DNA from: Chrysemys picta bellii
Lineage: Eukaryota
Assembly (NCBI RefSeq): GCF_011386835.1
Contig: NC_088791.1
Span: forward strand, 325,872,001-325,936,000
Length of the DNA stretch: 64,000 bases
Direction: 5' to 3'
Shown here: positions 14,710-58,411 of the stretch, piece by piece
Position numbering within the stretch: position 1 is the first letter of the stretch
Layout of the letters: every line of letters starts with the position of its first letter
The notes under the pieces: model-generated
The model's input: only the letters and a program-made list of their open reading frames with translations
Databases searched by the model: none
Told to the model about the DNA's origin: nothing
Translations under genes and position numbers: made by a program

Positions 14710-15360
14710 GGTGTGTTAATGTTCAGCTGCCTAGTGCATACCCTTTACACAGAGGCTTCTGAGGGGTCCAGCGTAGGCCTATGTTGTATCTGCACTGAGG
14801 GAAATTCTGCCACAGCCCCTTATGGTACAATTCTAGTCTGTGCACATGGTCTGTTGATGGGCAGGATCGAATCGGGGACCTCTGGAGCTTAGTGCATGAG
14901 CCACTACTGCAGGGATCGGCAACCTTTGGCACGCAGCTCGCCAGGGTCAGTTTGTTTACCTGCCGTGTCCACAAGTTCGGCCAATCGTGGCTCCCACTGG
15001 CCGCGGTTCGCTGTTCCAGGCCAACAGGGGTGGCGGGAAGCGGTGGCCAGCCCATCCCTCGGCCCGCGCTGCTTCCCACTGCCCCCATTGGCCTGGAGTG
15101 GCGAACCGCAGCCAGTGGGAGCTGCGATCGGCCAAACCTGCGGATGCGGCAGGTAAACAAACCGGCCCGGCCCGTCAGGGTGCTTACCCTGGTGAGCCAT
15201 GTGCCAAAGGTTGCCGATCCCTGCTCGACTGCGTGAGCTAAAAGCCAATTGCCTGTTAGCTAAGGCTGTAGAGCAGACTCATTAATTGCTCTCTCTTTAA
15301 GTGGTCTTGGTGCCACTAGATGGGACAGGACACCACACCCAGAAGATGTGTGGGTTACAC
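14710..15360 (-). mobile_element. Repeat with a tRNA-like head (A and B boxes), interrupted by a MITE
   Basis: Minus strand reads TAGCTCACGC (A-box-like, 15231-15240), then the insert, then GATTCGATCC (B-box-like, 14864-14873). Outer limits approximate. Confidence 0.55.
14910..15223. mobile_element. Palindromic hAT-Charlie-type MITE, copy 1
   Basis: TIR cagggatcggcaacctttggcac at both ends; flanks cactactg/ctcgactg; near-identical to 42004-42338 and 58077-58411. Confidence 0.9.
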
Positions 15361-42003: not shown

Positions 42004-42338
42004 CAGGGATTGGCAACGTTTGGCATGCGGCTCGCCAGGGTAAGCACCCTGGTGGGCCGGGCCGGTTTGTTTACCTGCCGCGTCCACAGGTTCAGCCGAT
42101 CGTGGCTCCCACTGGCCGCGGTTCGCCTCTCCAAGCCAATGGGGGCTGCGGCAAGCGGCGGCCAGCACATCCCTCGGCCCATGCCGCTTCCTGCAGCCCC
42201 CATTGGCCAGGAGTGGCGAACCGCGGACAGTGGGAGGTGCGATCGGCCGAACCTGCGGACGCGGCAGGTAAACAAACCGGCCCGGCCCGCCAGGGTGCTT
42301 ACCCTGGCAAGCCGCGTGCCAAAGGTTGCCAATCCCTG
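42004..42338. mobile_element. Palindromic hAT-Charlie-type MITE, copy 2
   Basis: TIRs cagggattggcaac and gttgccaatccctg; perfect TSD ggctactt. Confidence 0.92.
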
Positions 42339-45564: not shown

Positions 45565-46351
45565 TAGGGTTACCATACGTCCGGATTTTCCCGGACATGT
45601 CCGGCTTTTTGGGACTCAAATCCCCGTCCGGGGGGAAATCCCCAAAAGCCGTACATGTCCGGGAAAATCCGGCGCCGCTGGGCCGGGGGCTGGCCCGGGG
45701 CCGGCGGTGCCGGGCGGCCGGGGGGTGTGCCGGGCCGGCGGTGCCGGGCGGCCGGGGGGTGCGCCGGGCCGGCGGGGGCCGGCGGTGCCGGGCGGCCCGG
45801 GGGTGCGCCAGGGGCCGGCGGTGCCTGGCGGCCGGGGAGTGCGCCGGGCTGGCAGCGCCGGGCGGCCGGGGGGTGCGCCGGGCCGCCGGGGGCCGCCGGC
45901 GCTGGGCCGCCGGGGGGTACGCCGGGCCGCCGGGGGCCGGCGGTGCTGGGCGGTGCGCCGGGCCGCCGGGGCCGGCGGTGCTGGGTGGGCCGGGGACCGG
46001 GGGTGCTGGGCGGGCCGGGGGTGCTCGGCCGGGGACCCGGGGGCCGGGCCGGGGGTGCTCGGCCGGGGGCCCGGGGGCCGGCAGTGCTGGGCGGGCCGGG
46101 GGGTGGTCGGCCGGGGGCCGGGGCCGGCACCCCAGGGCCCGAGCCGACCCAGGCTGGAGCCGCCGGGGGGGCCATCCTGGGCTGCGCCTCCTCCCCCCAC
46201 ACCCCCCTTACCTGCTTCAGGCTTCCCGCGAATCAAATGTTCGCGGGAAGCAGGGGAGGAGGCGGAGACTTTGGGGAAGGGGCGGGGGCGGGGCGGGGCC
46301 GGGGCCCCGTGGAGTGTCCTCCATTTGGAGGCACAAAATATGGTAACCCTA
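45565..46351. mobile_element. Young Blackjack-type hAT MITE carrying a GC-only minisatellite
   Basis: TIRs tagggttaccata and tatggtaacccta; flanking repeat agttaac (7 bp matching); CpGs intact. Confidence 0.9.
45672..46140. repeat. GC-rich minisatellite, unit about GCCGGCGGTGCCGGGCGGCCGGGGGGTGCGCCGG
   Basis: Direct reading of tandem degenerate units. Confidence 0.85.
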
Positions 46352-46504
46352 AGTTAACAGTACTTTGTGCTTATTGAGCCTGATCCTGGCTGGTGCTCTG
46401 TAGCCTCATCTAATCTTCCACTGACTTGCTGGCTCAAACAAGTCCCTGGGCATTGGGGGAGGGCAGTCCCTTGTAGGGTCAGGCCCCTGTAGAACCTTCC
46501 ATCT

Positions 46505-48222: not shown

Positions 48223-48641
48223 TGAGGTCAATGGCAAAACTCCCATTGACTACAACAGGGCCAGAATTTCACACAAGGTCCCTGCCCTGAAGACTTGACA
48301 GTCTAGCTATCTAGACAATGTAAATAGATAACGTTCAACTAGGAAAGGGGGAATTGGGAAGCAGCAAAGGCAAAGTTTAGCACAAGTCTTACCAATGTAA
48401 CCACTTTCATTTAGACGTAGGGAGCAATTCACCATGCCTTGTCTGGTCATGAATATCACTGCAAAGTGGCTGTAAAATATTATCACATCCGAATGGCAGC
48501 ATTTCCACACTTCTTGCTTTCCTTTTTCCACTGGTGTAAAATGAAGAATCTGGCACTTTCCATCTAGTTTACTCATAGCGCTTGTTTAAGGAAGTACTAA
48601 AATAATTTATACTGGTTTTCTGTGCTGTCTGACTCTCTAAA

Positions 48642-48837
48642 AAAAGAACAGGAGTACTTGTGGCACCTTAGAGACTAACAAATTTATTAGAGCATAAGCT
48701 TTTGTGGACTACAGCCCACTTATTCGGATGCATATCCACGAAAGCTTATGCTCTAATAAATTTGTTAGTCTCTAAGGTGCCACAAGTACTCCTGTTCTTT
48801 TTGCGGATACAGACTAACACGGCTGCTACTCTGAAAC
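48642..48837. mobile_element. Minimal Penelope hairpin insertion (inverted pLTR only)
   Basis: About 65-bp near-perfect inverted arms (gtggcaccttagagactaacaaatttatt family); 13-bp TSD ctgactctctaaa at 48629-48641 and 48838-48850. Confidence 0.9.
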
Positions 48838-49150
48838 CTGACTCTCTAAAGGGTCTCAGATGCAGTTTGTATAACAGATACTATACATACAGGAGCAGAT
48901 CCTCCGCATTTTATGCCAGCTAAGGATCTGTCCCGCACTTTCTTTCTTCCCTTTCTATTGTACTCTATTTAATTACCCAGATAGATAATACACTACCACT
49001 TTTCACTTCCATATATTGTCCTATCCAAGGCTCTCACAGCACTATACACACATTAATGAGTTAAGCATAGCTCCTTTGAGGTATCAAATTTACTGATCTG
49101 TAAAACGAGACATACAGAAGTTAAGTGACTTGTCCAAGGTCACACTATGA

Positions 49151-49432
49151 GGGCATGTCTACACTTACCGGGGATCGACGCTGTGACTATTGGTGCACTG
49201 GGGATCTTCACTAGACCCGCTAAATCGACCGAAGATCACTCTCTCGTCGACTCCGGTATTCCACCGGAATGAGAAGAATAAGGGAAGTCAACAGGAGAGT
49301 GTCTCCGATTGACGCAGCATGGTCTACACACAGCAGTAAGTCGATCTAAGCTACATTGACTCCAGCTACGTTAGTCACGTAGCTGAAGTGGCGTAACTTA
49401 GGTCGACTTACCCCCACAGTGTAGATAAGGCC
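49151..49432. mobile_element. PIF/Harbinger-type MITE inside a MIR-like SINE
   Basis: Termini gggcatgtctacactt and agtgtagataaggcc. Confidence 0.7.
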
Positions 49433-50701
49433 ATAGTCACTGTTAAAGTGAGGAACTCCTGATTTCTACTCTGCTGCTCTACTCACTAGTAGGCACTGCT
49501 TCTTGTAAGATAACAGCTCATTCATGAAAAGCTGTAGGACCTTCTATTTTTAACTACTTTTAAATTGCTGATGGTATGAATACTTGTTTGGTCATTTTTC
49601 ACGTAGCAGGTTGTAGCTAAACGTTAGATCTGCTGTAGCTCTCTATGACCTGGCTGATAAAAATCCAGATGAGTCATTAATACTTAAATAGCTGCTCAAA
49701 ACTACACGTGTAATCATTGTTCGGAAATGTGTAAGCCACTGTTGGATTCAAAGATAATGTAATACCAGGCTTTGGAGATTAGCAGGGGAAAAAAGAAAAC
49801 TTGGGATCCAGGTCAGGCAGGAAATGAATGGTCTTAGGAAGTTCTCCAGTTTGTGGGGAGAGGGCTCAAGGGAATCCCAGAGCCAAAATTCTCACTGCTG
49901 CTAGATTAAAGGAAGTGCATGCATCTGTGTCTGTGGCAATGGACTGGGAAAATGGGGGACACCATCATGTTTTCCTTCCTGGTCTTCAGTTCACTTTATA
50001 GCTGATGGCTTAAAATTGTACATTCCAAAAACGAGCACACACTAGTTGGAGGTATTTCCTTAGTCATCTCAGCGCAGCTGTTTGACTCCCATGGCTCTCA
50101 AGCCTACTGTGAAGCTGCATACTATGAATCTCCTTGCAACAAGATCAGAACATACCCTATACGGAATGACTGCTAGTTTCAGCTCCCCGAGCTGCACTTG
50201 TCCCCGCACCTCCTGATCTACACACACCCTGTCTGGGGCCCCACGAAGTCGTGAGGCCTCCTTGTCAATCTTCTCCTGGTGCTGGCCAAAGTGGCCATCC
50301 ATAATACTCGGAGGAGGACGCTGGGTGAAGAGGTGCTCTGCGACTGTGGAGCCTATTTCTGTTCCGCCCTTCAATCACGTACCCAGGCAGAATTCCTCTA
50401 AGCCACATCTGCTGGCTCCTTTGAGAAGCAGTTAGTGCTGTCTGGGGTTCTCTGCTTGGTGTCCCCCTCAGACAGGGCCGGCTCTAGACACCAGCAAAGC
50501 AAGCAGGTGCTTGGGGCGGCAAATTTGCAGGAGCGCAAGAATCCAGCATGAGAGCTGAGAACCAACAGGGGGCCCTGGGAGCTGTAGTTCCTTGGTTAGC
50601 TCCCTGCCTATAGAGCCAGCCCTGGAGCAGGGAAAGAACTACATTTCCCAAAAAACAACAAGGAGTCTGGTGGCACCTTAAAGACTAACAGATTTATTTG
50701 G

Positions 50702-50743
50702 GCATAAGCTTTCGTGGGTAAAAACCTCACTTCTTCAGATGCA
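50702..50743 (-). ncRNA. Minimal type I hammerhead ribozyme motif in the Penelope pLTR
   Basis: Minus strand U-GCAU-CUGAAGA-A-GUGAG-guuuuua-CCCAC-GAAA-GC-UU-AUGC: stem I GCAU/AUGC, conserved core, stem II with one mismatch, palindromic AGCU stem III. Confidence 0.65.
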
Positions 50744-51238
50744 TAGAGTGAAAGTTACAGATGCAGGCATTATATACTGACACATGGAGAGCAGGGAGTT
50801 ACTTCTGTAATGAGCCAGCCACTCCCAGTCCCTATTCAAGCCCAGATTAACGGTGTTAAATTTGCAGATGAATTTTAGTTCTGCTGTTTCTCTCCCTGGT
50901 CATTCTATTACAGATTTAAAAGTCACTATCATTGAACAAAAAAACTTCAGAAACAGACTTCAAAGAGAAACAGCAGAACTAAAATTCATTTGCAAATTTA
51001 ACACCGTTAATCTGGGCTTGAATAGGGACTGGGAGTGGCTGGCTCACTACAGAAGCAGCTTTTCCTCTCCTGGAATTGACACCTCCTCATCTATTATTGG
51101 GAGTGGACTACATCCACCCTGATTGAATTGGCCCTGTCAACACTGGTTCTCCACTTGTGAAGTAACTCCCTGCTCGCCATGTGCCAGTATATAATGCCTG
51201 CATCTGTAACTTTCACTCTATGCATCTGAAGAAGTGAG

Positions 51239-52350
51239 TAGGGTTACCATATTTCAGCAAGCAAAAAAGAGGACGGGAGGAGCCCCGCCCTAGCCCCGCC
51301 CCTGCCCCTCCCACTTCCTGCCCCCCCAGAACCCCCAACCCTCCCCCCGTTCCTTGTCCCCTGACTGCCCCCTCCTGGGACCCCTGCCCCTAACTGCCCC
51401 CCAGGACTCCACTCCCTATCTAAGCCTCCCTGCCTCTTGTCCCCTGACTGCCCCAACCCTTATCCACACCCCCACCCCCAGACAGACCCCTGGGACTCCC
51501 ACGCCCCATCCAACCACTCCCCACCCCCTGACAGCCCCCCCCCAGAACTCCCAACCCATCTAAACCCCTCTGCTCCCTGTCCCCTGACTGCTCCGATCCC
51601 TCTCCCCACTCCTGCCCCCTGACAGCTCCCCCCCAGAACTCTCAGCCCCCCACCCTGCTCCTTGTCCCCTGACTGCCCCCTCCTGGGACCCCTGCTCCTA
51701 ACTGCCCTCCAGAACCCCACTCCCTACCTAAGACTCCCTGTTCCTTGTCCCCTAACTGCCCCCTCCTAAGACCCCCCCCAACTGCCCCCCAGGACCCTAC
51801 CCCCTACCTGTACCCTGACTGCCCAAAACTTTCTCCACTCCCCCCCAAAAGCCCCCCCCCCCCCCGTTTCTTGACTGCCACCTCCAGAACCACCCTGCCC
51901 CTTCTCCTGCCCCCTGGCCCCCTTACCCTGCTGCTCAGAACAGGGTGTTGGGCTCTGTGCCAGCCGGACACGTGGCTGCGCTCCCCAGCACAACAAAACC
52001 TGGTCCCTGGCCCAGACCGGGCTGCAGGGGAGAGCTGCCCTTGTATCAGCACAAAGTGCTCTCGCTCCCGTTTTGCTACGCTGCATGGCAGAAACCGCTC
52101 CCAGTTGCAAAAGGGGAGGGCTGCACTTTGTGCTGATACACTTGCTCAGAATGCAGGGCGGAGCTCCTCTACAGCTGCTCCGGAGTCCAGCCCGGGACTT
52201 TCCTGCAGCCCTCCCAGCCGCTCGCTCTGCTCTGCCGGGGGAGGGGGGAAATCCCGGTCATTGTGAGTGCTTTACAAATTCCCCCCGGATGCTATTTTTA
52301 GTACAAAAAGGAGGACATGTCCGGGTAAATCCGGACTAATGGTAACCCTA
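51239..52350. mobile_element. Blackjack-type hAT MITE (innermost); C-rich minisatellite at about 51350-51860
   Basis: TIRs tagggttaccat and atggtaacccta; perfect TSD gaagtgag at 51231-51238 and 52351-52358. Confidence 0.93.
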
Positions 52351-55300
52351 GAAGTGAGGTTTTTACCCACGAAAGCTTATGCCCAAATAAATCTGTTAGT
52401 CTTTAAGGTGCCACCAGACTCCTTGTTATTTTTGTAGATACAGACTAACACGGCTACCCCCTGATACATTTCCCAGCATTCCCTGGGCCGCAGTTAACAG
52501 GAAAGGGAGGGGGAAGGAGTGTAGAACTGAAACCTCATGCTGCAGCTTGCTGTAAATGGTAGGAACAGAGCCAGCTCTAGGTTTTTTGCCGCCCCCCACC
52601 TCAGCCCTGGGCTCCCCCCACACTCCTGTGTTGCCCCAGCCCTGGACTCTCCCCCGCCCACACCCCCTGCTGCCCCAGCCCTGGGTTCTCCCCCCACCCG
52701 CACCCCCTGCCGCCCCAGCCCTGGCTGCCACCCGCACCCCATGTTGCCCCAGCCCTGGGCTCTTTCCCCTCCCCCCCCGCACCTCCTGCCACCCCATCCC
52801 TGGGCTCTTCCCCCCCACACACACACCTCCTGCCACCCCAGCCCTGGGCTCTTCCCCCCCCAACCCGCACCTCCCGCCACCCCAGCCCTGGGCTCTTCCC
52901 CATCCCCACCCGCATCTCCTGCCACCCCAGCCCTGGGCTCTTCTCCCCCCCTGCACCCGCACCCCCAGCCGTCCCAGCTGTGGCCCCCACCCGCACCTCC
53001 TGCTGCCCCAGCCTGGGCTCTCTCCCCCCCCACACACACACACACCCCTGCCCTGGACTCTCCCCCAAAGAAAGAATTGGATGGACTAAATGGACATTGC
53101 ACCTCTCTATTTGAAGCCTAGCAAGGCAGGTACGTGGATCCCACTAGAATTTAAAATGAAAAGTAAGGGAGGGGAGGGCTCTACTAGACTGGGCAGCTTT
53201 AGATACAGTACCAGGCACGTAGGAGGATTTACACTTCTGAGCCATGGAAGCAGAAATTGACTTTTCTTTTCCAGATATAGCTAATATTCAGAAAGGGAAT
53301 CTAGCACCTGCCTTCCAGATTTGAACACCCTCAAAATTCAGGAGTGCTCAAGCTCAATTTGGGCAGCTGTTACTTCATTTCTCCCAAATCAAATATACTG
53401 ATCCACTGTAACTTGCTGTAGGAAAAAGTAAAATAAATTGAGCAAGAAATGCTTCCCAGTGGTTATTAGGACTGGAATTGCTATTTTCAACAGCCATTGA
53501 TTTTTTAATTATTATTATTATTATTATTAAGTTTTAGTTTTATTTGTTTAAAAGGAAGACAGTGATATTGCATTGGAAAATTCCCCATAGAAACAAAGAA
53601 TGGAACAAAAGAATAATAAAGGCACCTCAACTTTTCCTCATTTATTTAGGACAGTCTTACAATATGCATCCAGATAGCCAACCTGAAAATTGTTCCACTT
53701 TACTGCAGTTCTGTAACCATATGGGAATCAATCCTGTCTGTGTTCTGTGCACATCGAAAATTCCTGCTGAATGACCCGCCCTGGGAGCGAGTTACCAGTG
53801 ACTCAAGGCTGGGGCGGCAGGAGGGTGCAGTGGGGGGGGGGGGGGGAGGCAGCCAAAATTTGTTTTTTGCTTGGGGCAGCAAAAAAACCTAGAGCCGGCC
53901 CTGCCCTCAGATTCCCTACTTCTGGCCCTATGACCTCACTACCATTCCTGTTTTCTTATTGTCTCCTGGAATCATTTGAGCCCAGGTTCTGTCACTCCAT
54001 CCTGTAGGCTGCGGGAGGGACCTTCAGACGCCCGCCTGCTCCCGGATCTCAATAGGTATTAGGCTGTCTCTTCAGCACAGGCTGGGGATCAGTGGTTTGA
54101 GGAGGCTGACACTCACTTCAGTATCCTTTGGTGTGTTTGTTTTAGGAGCTGGGCCTGTCTGCTCCTTCATACTGCAGTGGGACTGGCAGAAGTTAAAAAA
54201 AATGTACCCTAAACTTATGAGGAAGAATCTATCTACTCTGCATTTGTGCCCTCCTTCGTGGCTTTCTGAATTGCTGCCTAATGAATAGCTTATATTTAAC
54301 TGCGGCAGAAGCTAGATTAGATGTGCCCTGGGCGTCTGAGCAAGTAGCATTAATATCTAAATTGTTCATGATTTACACATTCAGTGTGTAATTTGTATTA
54401 AGGCATATAGATGGTAATCTATATCAAACACTTATGTGGCTCTTGCTTAGATATCAGGGTAAAGAGAGATGCATATTGTTTACTTCTTGTGAATTACTCT
54501 CCATATAACTATATTACATGGACATTATCATTGAAAAAATCATGTTTTCGGGAACAATTTTTTTTTTACTTGGGGTTAGATTTGAGTTTATTTTCTGTGT
54601 GTAGTAGGGGTAGCAACCCAGAGTCAGGATCCAAGAATCACAATCTGCCTCTCAGTTACCCTGCTGCTTTGATGAGGGGAAAAACTCTGAGTCTATACCT
54701 GGTCTATACAGGAGGAAGGGGTGGAGGTATGCCTCTGCCCAGTCTCCACCCCTTTCTGCCTTGTAAGTGGCTTTGCAGGGCCTACTTCCATTCTCACATT
54801 GGTACTGGAGGTACCATGGTATGGGCATGAGAGAAGAAAGGGAATGACTAACAGGATGGACCATGATCTGTCCCTAAGAAGTTTTAGAATCTACGTTGCT
54901 GTAGTGCCAGATCTGATCTCACTGGTATCAGTGTGATTTTGCCATTGGAGAAAGATCTGGCCATTTTTACTGTCCTGGGTTTTTTGTTTATTTTGTTCTG
55001 CCTTTTGTATTTCTCTCAGCTGGGGCAATGAAGTAAACTCATCAGTTTCACTTTTGTTTCTAGTCCATCTGGGCCAAATTTTGCCTTTATTGCAAATTTA
55101 CCATGAGAGTAGAATGTGACCCTTTCACTTTCAGGTTCTTTAGTCTTCATTTAAATTCCGGGTCAGATCCTGCAGCCCTTGAGTCTCTGAATCAGCAATC
55201 CATCCCTATTCAGCAAAACACTTTTGCATATACTTAATTCCCGTTGACGTCAGTGGAACTCAGGCACATGCCTAAACTTAAGAACATACTTATATGCTTG

Positions 55301-55399
55301 GCTGAACTGAGTCATAAGTGAGCAAAGCACCCACTGACTCCTGTGGGAGTTCTCCTTAATATAAAGACAGCAGAATTCAGCCCTATCGCCCTTCTGAAA

Positions 55400-55718
55400 C
55401 AGAGGTCCCCAAAATGTGGGGTGTGCCCCCCTAGGGGGGCACAGAGGAACATTTGGGGGTCCACAACTGGGGCCCGGGCCCGCTCCCATGGGGGATGGGG
55501 AGGGAATGCCACCTAGCTCCACGCCTGGCCCCGGCTCCTGGCTCCGCTCCCAGCCCCGCCCCACCGACAGTTATGGCCCCAGATTGGCCCCCTTACCCCT
55601 GTCCACACACCCCTCTCCCGGAGCTGTGGTCCCGCTCCCGGCCCCAGCTCGTGGGGGGCCGGAGGGAGGGTGGACCGGGGTAAGGGGAGGCATGAGGTAA
55701 AAAGTCTGGGGACCGCTG
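55400..55718. mobile_element. hAT-Charlie-type MITE
   Basis: TIRs cagaggtccccaaa and tctggggaccgctg; flanks ttctgaaa/ttctaaaa. Confidence 0.8.
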
Positions 55719-58076: not shown

Positions 58077-58411
58077 CAGGGATCGGCAACCTTTGGCACG
58101 TGGCTTGCCAGGGTAAGCACCCTGGCGGGCTGGGCTGGTTTGTTTCCCTGCCGCATCTGCAGGTTCGGCCGATCGCGGCTCCCACTGGCCGCTGTTCGCC
58201 ACTCCAGGCCAATGGGGGCTGCAGGAAGTGGCGGCCAGCACATCCCTCAGCCCACGCCGCTTCCTGCAACCCCCATTGGCCTGGAACGGTGAACCACAGC
58301 CAGTGGGAGCTGCGATTGGCTGAACCTGCGGACGTGCCAGGTAAACAAACCAGCCTGGCCCACTAGGGTGCTTACCCTGGTGAGCCGCGTGCCAAAAGTT
58401 GCCGATCCCTG
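58077..58411. mobile_element. Palindromic hAT-Charlie-type MITE, copy 3
   Basis: TIR cagggatcggcaac at both ends; perfect TSD atatagta. Confidence 0.92.

What the first reader, a model, noticed from the sequence alone, without database searches (positions are those of the whole stretch)
50192..54055. Four-level nested transposon stack with three readable target-site duplications
A Tx1 ORF2 3' end is split by a hAT MITE (TSD ccctcaga). That MITE is split by a Penelope element (repeat acatttccca), which is split by a Blackjack-type hAT MITE (TSD gaagtgag). Removing each insert rejoins its host; for example the Tx1 frame continues LVSPS-DSLLLAL*. This gives a strict relative age order for four families from three transposition mechanisms at one site, and about 430 bp has grown to about 3.9 kb. 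Inference: a permissive insertion site, or simple tolerance of insertions within already neutral DNA.
Basis: partly seen in the sequence, partly recalled or inferred. Interest (0 to 1): 0.72.

Follow-up and report, generated by a model that had tools for sequence, protein, structure and literature searches.

The report
Nested transposon pile-up in turtle DNA
Three mobile elements inserted one inside another into the dead tail of a fourth in a turtle genome; the nesting is real and neatly readable, but it is the ordinary fate of junk DNA, not a new phenomenon.

Summary
The nesting is real, at the stated coordinates. A 5'-truncated LINE ORF2 tail (50192-50472 and 53912-~54055) is split by a terminal-inverted-repeat (TIR) element (50473-53903, 8-bp target-site duplication, TSD, CCCTCAGA). 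That element is split by a Penelope-like fold-back (50651-52465, 10-bp duplication ACATTTCCCA). The fold-back is split by a 1,112-bp TIR element (51239-52350, TSD GAAGTGAG).

- **LINE host rejoins.** About 90 turtle ORF2 homologues stop fitting at 50470, most with 7 residues left. The piece after the insert supplies exactly 7 codons plus a stop.
- **Penelope host rejoins.** Its intact left arm bridges the insertion site, and the two right-arm halves tile on it with an 8-nt overlap.
- **Middle layer rests on indirect evidence.** It is supported only by its 10-bp duplication, family ends seen in reads, and a second fold-back nearby.

Corrections:
- The "hAT MITE" is a 1.6-kb composite with four TIR-like ends and a high-copy internal block.
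- "Tx1" and "Blackjack" were not testable.
- Nesting orders three insertion events, not four families.
- Nothing points to a special insertion site.

Earlier notes of this scan record Penelope fold-backs with 10-bp duplications elsewhere in this genome. Nested insertions are already used genome-wide for dating transposons. Interest is low.

The parts
50192..50472 (+). Layer 1, left part: 5'-truncated C-terminal coding region of a LINE (non-LTR) ORF2. It has two in-frame stops, at 50252-50254 and 50399-50401, and ends in the first two bases (GA) of a split codon.
   Evidence: tblastn of 105 fetched proteins gave 89 HSPs here. The top-scoring ones all start at 50192 and most end at 50470, at 57-72 % identity. 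phmmer of the 48-aa piece against 1.84 billion proteins gave 15 hits, best E = 3e-13. Homologues come from sea turtles and Chelydra and carry zf-RVT PF13966 just upstream.
50465..50472 (.). Target-site duplication of layer 2, left copy (CCCTCAGA).
   Evidence: Identical to 53904-53911 and abuts the TIR.
50473..50650 (+). Layer 2, left part. The outer left TIR CAGGGCCGGCTCTAG is at 50473-50487. A MITE-like unit spans 50473-50624 and ends in an inner TIR-like end (ATAGAGCCAGCCCTG, 50610-50624). The first 26 bp of a 116-bp spacer follow.
   Evidence: 270-348 contigs per run, in each of 4 organisms, start to fit exactly at 50473 with unrelated sequence before it (table 7).
50641..50650 (.). 10-bp duplication flanking layer 3, left copy (ACATTTCCCA).
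   Evidence: Identical to 52466-52475.
50651..51238 (+). Layer 3, left part of a Penelope-like fold-back. The inverted arm is 50651-50893 and lacks about 98 nt that the direct arm has at 51061-51158. The loop is 50894-50963. The direct arm starts at 50964. A 74-codon ORF tail runs 50898-51119 with its stop at 51120-51122.
   Evidence: Inverted repeats I1, I2 and I3 are 96-99 % complementary. The arms differ at 7 of 251 positions. 182-255 contigs per run start to fit at 50651 with unrelated flanks. ORF tail. The nearest Pfam-bearing Atlas cluster is GIY-YIG at 0.85, a lead only.
51231..51238 (.). Target-site duplication of layer 4, left copy (GAAGTGAG).
   Evidence: Identical to 52351-52358. 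The sequence occurs once in the intact left arm.
51239..52350 (+). Layer 4: a 1,112-bp non-autonomous TIR element. Its ends are TAGGGTTACCAT and ATGGTAACCCTA, it holds a C-rich ~83-bp tandem array (about 51300-51900), and it has no ORF with a family match.
   Evidence: TIR and TSD. Tandem array. A second family copy at 45565-46351 (opposite strand) shares the first 16 nt and the last ~48 nt.
52351..52465 (+). Layer 3, right part: the second TSD copy of layer 4 (52351-52358), then the rest of the direct arm and the 3' tail of the Penelope-like element.
   Evidence: Tiles on the intact left arm with an 8-nt overlap. 144-196 contigs stop fitting at 52467 with unrelated sequence after it in two of the four runs; the table was cut. 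The tail resembles the fold-back copy at 48641-48839.
52466..53903 (+). Layer 2, right part, in order: the second copy of ACATTTCCCA (52466-52475), 90 bp of spacer, an inner TIR-like end (52566-52596), a 44-bp C-rich tandem array (about 52600-53057), a 740-bp block that is high-copy in reads (53058-~53800), one inverted G-rich unit, and the outer right TIR (53889-53903).
   Evidence: Paralogous contigs bridge 52565/52566 in two organisms (records 5 and 29). Summed depth over 53080-53815 is 220-400 thousand in run X1 and proportionally high in the other three.
53904..53911 (.). Target-site duplication of layer 2, right copy (CCCTCAGA).
53912..54055 (+). Layer 1, right part: T completes the split codon (GA|T = Asp), then SLLLAL and the stop at 53931-53933, then presumed 3' UTR. 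The 3' limit is not verified.
   Evidence: for the translation. Homologue C-termini ..SPSGSLCLAL..SPSGSLVLAF and ..SPSGFLHLTL come. Single-copy contigs of all four organisms run from 54900 back to 53878-53882.

Best explanation
This is a chance pile-up of successive transposon insertions in non-functional DNA of a turtle genome.

1. A LINE copy was inserted 5'-truncated and decayed. It now has two in-frame stops.
2. A 1.6-kb non-autonomous cut-and-paste element of hAT type inserted 20 bp before the ORF2 stop codon, duplicating 8 bp.
3. A Penelope-like retroelement integrated into that element as a typical 5'-inverted fold-back, duplicating 10 bp. This presumably happened by target-primed reverse transcription.
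4. A second hAT-type non-autonomous element inserted into the direct arm of the fold-back, duplicating 8 bp.

Shown: the boundaries, the duplications, the rejoining of layers 1 and 3, and that the last step happened after the fold-back formed.

Inferred: the transposition mechanisms (from the hallmarks), that step 3 happened at this locus, and neutrality.
For: - **Exact duplications next to the element ends:**. Four of 21 TIR pairs in the window have perfect 8-bp TSDs against about 0.0003 expected.
- **Layer 1 rejoins:** the top-scoring turtle ORF2 homologues begin at 50192 and most stop at 50470 with exactly 7 residues left. The downstream piece gives 7 codons plus a stop.
- **Layer 3 rejoins:** the intact left arm spans the insertion site, and the two right-arm halves overlap on it by GAAGTGAG only.
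- **Family ends in four organisms:** hundreds of contigs start or stop fitting at 50473, 50651 and 52467 with unrelated flanks.
- **Second copies in the window:** the layer-4 family at 45565-46351, and a fold-back at 48641-48839 with its own 10-bp duplication GACTCTCTAA and the same end architecture.
- **Copy number:** flanks are single copy at about 40x, while all four layers are repeated.
- **Prior art:** nested interruptions are a standard, genome-wide observed phenomenon (PMC1914374, PMC2517846, PMC2672092).
Against: - No uninterrupted copy of the second-layer element was obtained. Its contiguity across the Penelope insert therefore rests on the 10-bp repeat alone. The expected empty-site joint (50650 to 52476) was not among the 15 joints shown of 1,638, and a metagenome scan for it was blank.
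- The second layer has four TIR-like ends and only the outer pair has a TSD, so its history has more steps than one simple MITE insertion.
- Pfam and Rfam give no hit for the Penelope ORF tail or for a hammerhead.
- Orthologous empty or filled states of the inner layers could not be read. The paralogues swamped the read tables.
Confidence: 0.85

Rival explanations
1. Cargo model. The Penelope fold-back, with or without the innermost element, was already inside the second-layer element at another locus. The whole 2.3-3.4-kb unit was then cut and pasted into the LINE tail by a transposase acting on the outer TIRs. The nesting would still order the sequences, but not three events at this site.
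For: The second layer looks like a composite moved by its outer ends. It has four TIR-like ends, and a TSD exists only for the outer pair. The junction between spacer and inner end recurs in paralogous contigs of two organisms (records 5 and 29), so composites of this kind have multiplied. An unchecked first-reader note on another piece of this genome describes a block between two hAT MITEs whose outer flanks form one target site.
Against: No second copy carrying the same MITE/Penelope junction was seen. The fold-back's left arm lacks the innermost insert, so at least that step followed fold-back formation. Longer elements are usually moved less efficiently; this rests on general knowledge of hAT elements and was not tested here.
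Confidence: 0.12
2. Five or more layers. The 740-bp block 53058-~53800 is a separate, unnamed repeat that inserted into the 44-bp array of the second-layer element. The 152-bp unit 50473-50624 and the unit 52566-53903 were once independent elements.
For: Summed depth in the block is 4-7 times that of the adjoining array. Two paralogous contigs begin to fit at 53058. A partial array unit seems to resume near 53783.
Against: No TSD flanks the block or either inner unit. Tandem arrays align poorly at the 85 % threshold, which alone could lower their depth. Depth near the right TIR (about 290 thousand at 53881, table 4) is similar to that of the block, as expected if the block is the core of the family.
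Confidence: 0.3
3. The site is a preferred target: a permissive or hot spot that attracts insertions.
For: Three insertions lie within 430 bp of original sequence. Both hAT-type inserts landed in other repeats.
Against: Each insertion went into a different, newly arrived sequence, not into one site. All the families involved are very abundant in four organisms, so nested hits are expected by chance. The 64-kb window holds several other solitary insertions of similar families.
Confidence: 0.03
4. Assembly artefact: repeats were wrongly joined in the reference.
For: The short-read contigs laid here break inside the repeats, and none spans the whole stack.
Against: A misjoin would not produce three exact flanking duplications, nor hosts that rejoin in register. 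Contigs of all four organisms end 22-26 nt inside the right TIR next to the same flank. That is under the tool's 31-nt bridging rule, so it is weak evidence.
Confidence: 0.02

Closest known systems
Nested transposon clusters and 'interruption analysis' or defragmentation used to order transposon ages (Giordano et al. 2007, PMC1914374; Abrusan et al. 2008, PMC2517846; REANNOTATE, PMC2672092)
   Same: A younger element interrupts an older one. The halves of the host rejoin when the insert and one TSD copy are removed. The order of interruption gives relative age.
   Different: Nothing in kind. This is a single locus, whereas those methods draw family-level ages from thousands of interruptions. 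That is why one stack cannot give a strict order of families.
Penelope-like elements with minimal hammerhead motifs in their terminal repeats (Cervera and De la Pena 2014, PMC4209133; turtles are mentioned)
   Same: The copy is 5'-truncated, with a partial copy of its own 3' region in inverted orientation. The boxes CUGAAGA..GAAA surround a 6-bp helix with a bulge, read by eye on the minus strand of 50651-50760. It has a short target duplication. The family is very high in copy number in turtle reads.
   Different: The RT is lost by truncation, so only a 74-codon ORF tail is left. Rfam's hammerhead models do not match, and Pfam finds no GIY-YIG domain.
Non-autonomous hAT elements (MITE-like), including composite or macro-transposition known from Ac/Ds in maize (own knowledge)
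   Same: Both have 8-bp TSDs, TIRs that begin YARNG (CAGGG.., TAGGG..), no coding capacity and variable internal tandem arrays. For layer 2, two units plus a spacer were moved by the outer ends.
   Different: No transposase-bearing relative was identified.
LINE ORF2 of the L1/Tx1 group
   Same: The C-terminal region lies after a Cys/His zinc knuckle (zf-RVT in the homologues). 5' truncation is typical of LINE copies.
   Different: Only the last ~100 codons are present. The clade (Tx1 against L1 proper) was not determined.

Membership tests
LINE (non-LTR retrotransposon) ORF2, L1/Tx1 group | Sequence homology to ORF2 proteins of the family | tested here: met
   phmmer best E = 3e-13 with 15 hits. 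tblastn gave 89 HSPs at 57-72 % identity over 50192-50470. One homologous cluster is named 'Reverse transcriptase zinc-binding domain' protein by UniRef.
LINE (non-LTR retrotransposon) ORF2, L1/Tx1 group | Reverse transcriptase and endonuclease domains | tested here: not met
   Absent from this copy, because homology starts only at 50192 (5' truncation). The fetched homologues are fragments of 440 aa or less and show zf-RVT PF13966 only. One reaches Pfam's cut-off, at 27.8 against 27.5 bits.
LINE (non-LTR retrotransposon) ORF2, L1/Tx1 group | Placement in the Tx1 clade rather than L1 proper (RT phylogeny) | not tested
   No named Tx1 reference sequence was available. A PDB sequence search with a 440-aa homologue was blank.
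hAT superfamily, non-autonomous (layers 2 and 4) | 8-bp target-site duplication | tested here: met
   CCCTCAGA and GAAGTGAG are both exact. The second copy of the layer-4 family has a 7-of-8 repeat.
hAT superfamily, non-autonomous (layers 2 and 4) | Short TIRs beginning 5'-YARNG | tested here: met
   CAGGGCCGGCTCTAG matches 15/15. TAGGGTTACCAT matches 12/12.
hAT superfamily, non-autonomous (layers 2 and 4) | Relation to a hAT transposase-bearing master element; for layer 4, to the Blackjack group | not testable with these tools
   No repeat library (Dfam/Repbase) was at hand. No ORF in either element has a Pfam match.
Penelope-like element (layer 3) | GIY-YIG endonuclease / RT open reading frame | tested here: inconclusive
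   Only a 74-codon tail is left. Pfam gave nothing at E <= 10 and the word search was blank. The nearest Atlas cluster with a Pfam family is GIY-YIG at 0.85, a lead only.
Penelope-like element (layer 3) | Hammerhead ribozyme motif in the terminal repeat | tested here: inconclusive
   The boxes CUGAAGA and GAAA around a 6-bp helix are visible in the arm, as described for minimal PLE hammerheads (PMC4209133). No Rfam hammerhead model matches at E <= 10.
Penelope-like element (layer 3) | 5'-truncated insertion with an inverted partial copy at the 5' side and a short target duplication | tested here: met
   Arms are 96-99 % complementary and the duplication is 10 bp. A second copy at 48641-48839 has the same layout and its own 10-bp duplication.

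The most novel reading that the evidence does not exclude
The second layer is a composite. Two MITE-like units of one hAT family, 116 bp apart at a donor locus, were mobilised together through their outer ends, carrying the DNA between them and possibly the Penelope copy as cargo. If such composites recur in this genome, turtle hAT MITEs would be moving host DNA around by macro-transposition.
Probability: 0.3. Interest if true: 0.3.

Novelty: already known. Interest (0 to 1): 0.1.

Why it matters
It matters little beyond annotation. The locus is a clean textbook example of nested insertions and gives three relative datings: LINE copy, then layer-2 element, then Penelope copy, then layer-4 element. 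It shows that both hAT-type families and the Penelope family were active after this LINE copy died. It could serve as a presence/absence marker set for turtle phylogeny if the layers differ among species. The composite build of the second layer is the only point that could lead somewhere, namely DNA capture and movement by paired MITEs.

Tried and rejected
- **Rfam.** On 49000-55500 at E <= 0.1, it gave only sub-threshold plant microRNA-precursor hits on both strands of 50799-51058 (120 bits against a gathering score of 230). These are the long hairpin of the fold-back, not genes. On 50630-50790 at E <= 10, it gave no hammerhead family. The arm folds no better than its shuffles (z = 0.45).
- **Pfam.** Nothing for the LINE pieces, the Penelope ORF tail, or six ORF pieces of 53058-53830.
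- **ESM Atlas.** Nothing for the LINE piece and a weak GIY-YIG lead for the Penelope tail.
- **Word-based protein search** with the Penelope tail: no candidates.
- **Reads.** Read laying at 85 % likeness was swamped by paralogues. The three empty-site joints I wanted were not among the 15 joints shown, so no orthologous empty or intermediate allele could be read.
- **Metagenome scan** for the predicted uninterrupted layer-2 junction: blank.
- **PDB sequence search** with a 440-aa LINE homologue: blank.
- **Joined sequences.** The pieces were searched and aligned apart, and contiguity was judged on uninterrupted relatives.


Full report
**What is there**

- **Layer 2** spans 50473-53903. It has perfect 15-nt terminal inverted repeats (TIRs), CAGGGCCGGCTCTAG and its complement. 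It is flanked by CCCTCAGA at 50465-50472 and 53904-53911.
- **Layer 3** spans 50651-52465 and is flanked by ACATTTCCCA at 50641-50650 and 52466-52475.
- **Layer 4** spans 51239-52350. It has 12-nt perfect TIRs, TAGGGTTACCAT and its complement. It is flanked by GAAGTGAG at 51231-51238 and 52351-52358.

The sizes add up: 425 + 1606 + 695 + 1112 + 26 bp of duplicated target = 3864 bp.

Chance is not an issue. The whole window holds 21 hAT-like (YARNG) perfect 11-nt TIR pairs 100-5000 bp apart. Four of them carry a perfect 8-bp duplication, where about 0.0003 would be expected, and two of the four are these.

**Layer 1 and its rejoining**

The frame from 50192 to 50470 has two in-frame stops. I searched the 48-residue piece between them with phmmer against 1.84 billion proteins. 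It gave 15 hits, best E = 3e-13.

The informative hits are short unnamed proteins of sea turtles (Lepidochelys, Eretmochelys, Natator). A second search from one of them gave 87 relatives in sea turtles and Chelydra. One cluster is named by UniRef as a reverse transcriptase zinc-binding domain protein. Several carry Pfam zf-RVT just upstream of the region aligned here.

tblastn of all 105 fetched proteins against the window gave 89 hits at this place. The top-scoring ones all begin at 50192, and most end at 50470 with exactly seven residues of the query left. The uninterrupted homologues end ..VLCSVSPSGSLCLAL..SPSGSLVLAF or ..SPSGFLHLTL.

The window reads ..VLCLVSPS, then GA of a split codon, then the insert. 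After the second TSD copy come T, SLLLAL and a stop at 53931-53933. That is seven codons and a stop, so the host rejoins in register.

The host is therefore the 5'-truncated, decayed tail of a LINE ORF2. Whether it belongs to the Tx1 clade was not testable. Its 3' limit (54055) is unverified, because from 54000 on the read depth is single copy.

**Layer 3 and its rejoining**

The insert at 50651-52465 is a fold-back.

- The inverted arm is 50651-50893.
- The loop is 70 nt.
- The direct arm runs from 50964 to 52465 and is interrupted by layer 4.
- The arms are 96-99 % complementary, differing at 7 of 251 positions.
- The left arm lacks about 98 nt that are present in the right arm.

The intact left arm serves as an internal reference. 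The two halves of the right arm tile on it and overlap by exactly GAAGTGAG. It also shows that layer 4 entered after the fold-back existed.

The direct arm carries a 74-codon ORF tail. Pfam does not recognise it. The nearest Atlas cluster with a Pfam family is GIY-YIG at a score of 0.85, which is a lead only.

The arm contains the boxes CUGAAGA and GAAA around a 6-bp helix with a bulge. This matches the description of minimal hammerheads in Penelope-like elements, turtles included (PMC4209133). Rfam's hammerhead models do not match.

A second, shorter fold-back of the same family lies at 48641-48839. It has the same end architecture and its own 10-bp duplication, GACTCTCTAA. Earlier notes of this scan describe the same architecture and a 10-bp duplication elsewhere in this genome. 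Those notes are unchecked, but my second copy is an independent observation.

**Layer 3 inside layer 2**

This step has the weakest direct support, because I could not obtain an uninterrupted copy of layer 2. What supports it:

- The exact 10-bp repeat.
- Family ends in reads. In each of four organisms, 182-255 contigs begin to fit at 50651 with unrelated sequence before it. In two of them, 144-196 contigs stop fitting at 52467 (table 7; that table was cut).
- The matching architecture of the second fold-back copy.

**Layer 2 is not a plain MITE**

It has four TIR-like ends:

- the outer left end at 50473;
- an inner end at 50610-50624 on the opposite strand (13 of 15 matches);
- an inner end at 52566-52596, which pairs with the outer right end over 31 nt at 81-87 %;
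- the outer right end at 53903.

So a 152-bp MITE-like unit and a 1.3-kb unit lie 116 bp apart, and the Penelope copy sits in that spacer. Only the outer ends are flanked by a duplication.

Paralogous contigs in two organisms bridge the spacer/inner-end junction (records 5 and 29). The composite, or at least spacer plus the 1.3-kb unit, is therefore itself multi-copy.

The 1.3-kb unit holds a 44-bp C-rich tandem array. It also holds a 740-bp block (53058-~53800) that has no other copy in the window and no Pfam or Rfam match. That block is nevertheless very deep in all four read sets. It is either the core of the family or a further insertion, and I could not decide which.

**Layer 4**

This is a non-autonomous element with conserved ends and a C-rich array of about 83-bp units. 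A second copy at 45565-46351, on the other strand, shares the first 16 and the last ~48 nt. It has a different GC-rich array and a 7-of-8 flanking repeat. The 8-bp duplication and the TAGGG.. ends fit hAT. 'Blackjack' is a recollection that I share but could not test.

**Other organisms**

Runs of seven coded organisms hold the stretch. I laid four of them.

- The flanks are single copy, up to 50135 and from 54000.
- In organisms C, D and E the flanks differ from the window by 0.8-2.5 %.
- In all four, the right-flank contig ends 22-26 nt inside the right TIR. This suggests the layer-2 insertion is shared, but it is under the tool's 31-nt rule for bridging.
- The inner layers could not be scored, because paralogues filled the tables.
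- The fold-back arms differ by 2.8 % (7 differences). This is of the same order as the flank divergence between organisms, so the Penelope insertion is probably about as old as their split. The count is too small to say more.

**Meaning**

The stack records three insertions into DNA that was already dead. Interruption order is a long-used dating principle applied genome-wide (PMC1914374, PMC2517846, PMC2672092).

One stack orders events, not families. For the middle step, a cargo scenario is not excluded. All four families are abundant in the reads, so stacks of this depth are expected to occur by chance. I cannot give a number without the genome. Nothing suggests a targeted or permissive site.

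The finding is correct, tidy and ordinary.

Noticed in passing
window 48631-48849: A 199-bp Penelope-like fold-back (two inverted ~95-nt arms plus a 3' tail) flanked by an exact 10-bp duplication, GACTCTCTAA. It has the same end architecture as the nested copy, and its hammerhead boxes are degenerate.
   Followed up: partly
window 45565-46351: A second copy (787 bp, minus strand) of the innermost element's family. The termini are the same, the internal GC-rich minisatellite is different (GC 70 % at 46000-46499), and the flanking repeat matches 7 of 8.
   Followed up: partly
window 42004-42338 and 58077-58411 (also 14910-15223): Two 335-bp palindromic MITEs of one family (ends CAGGGATYGGCAAC..) with perfect 8-bp duplications, GGCTACTT and ATATAGTA. 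A third TIR pair of the same kind at 14910-15223 has no perfect duplication.
   Followed up: no
window 51424-51791 against 51976-52159: Summed contig depth of the C-rich array of the innermost element is about 40 times lower in organisms D and E than in A and C. Its non-array part is similar in A, C and D. This suggests a subfamily amplified in one lineage.
   Followed up: no
window 53058-53800: A block with no other copy in the window and no Pfam or Rfam match. It is very deep in all four read sets, and paralogous contigs start to fit at 53058. It is either the core of the layer-2 family or an unnamed fifth insertion.
   Followed up: partly
window 50720-50745 (minus strand) and 51222-51238 / 52351-52380 (plus strand): The innermost element split the plus-strand hammerhead-like motif of the Penelope arm inside its helix II. 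The inverted copy is intact. This is the subject of another note of this scan on the same stretch. Rfam does not recognise either copy.
   Followed up: partly
window 50252-50254: The first in-frame stop of the LINE tail (TGA) stands where the turtle homologues have Arg (..PTKSRDLL..). This is consistent with CGA-to-TGA decay at a CpG.
   Followed up: no
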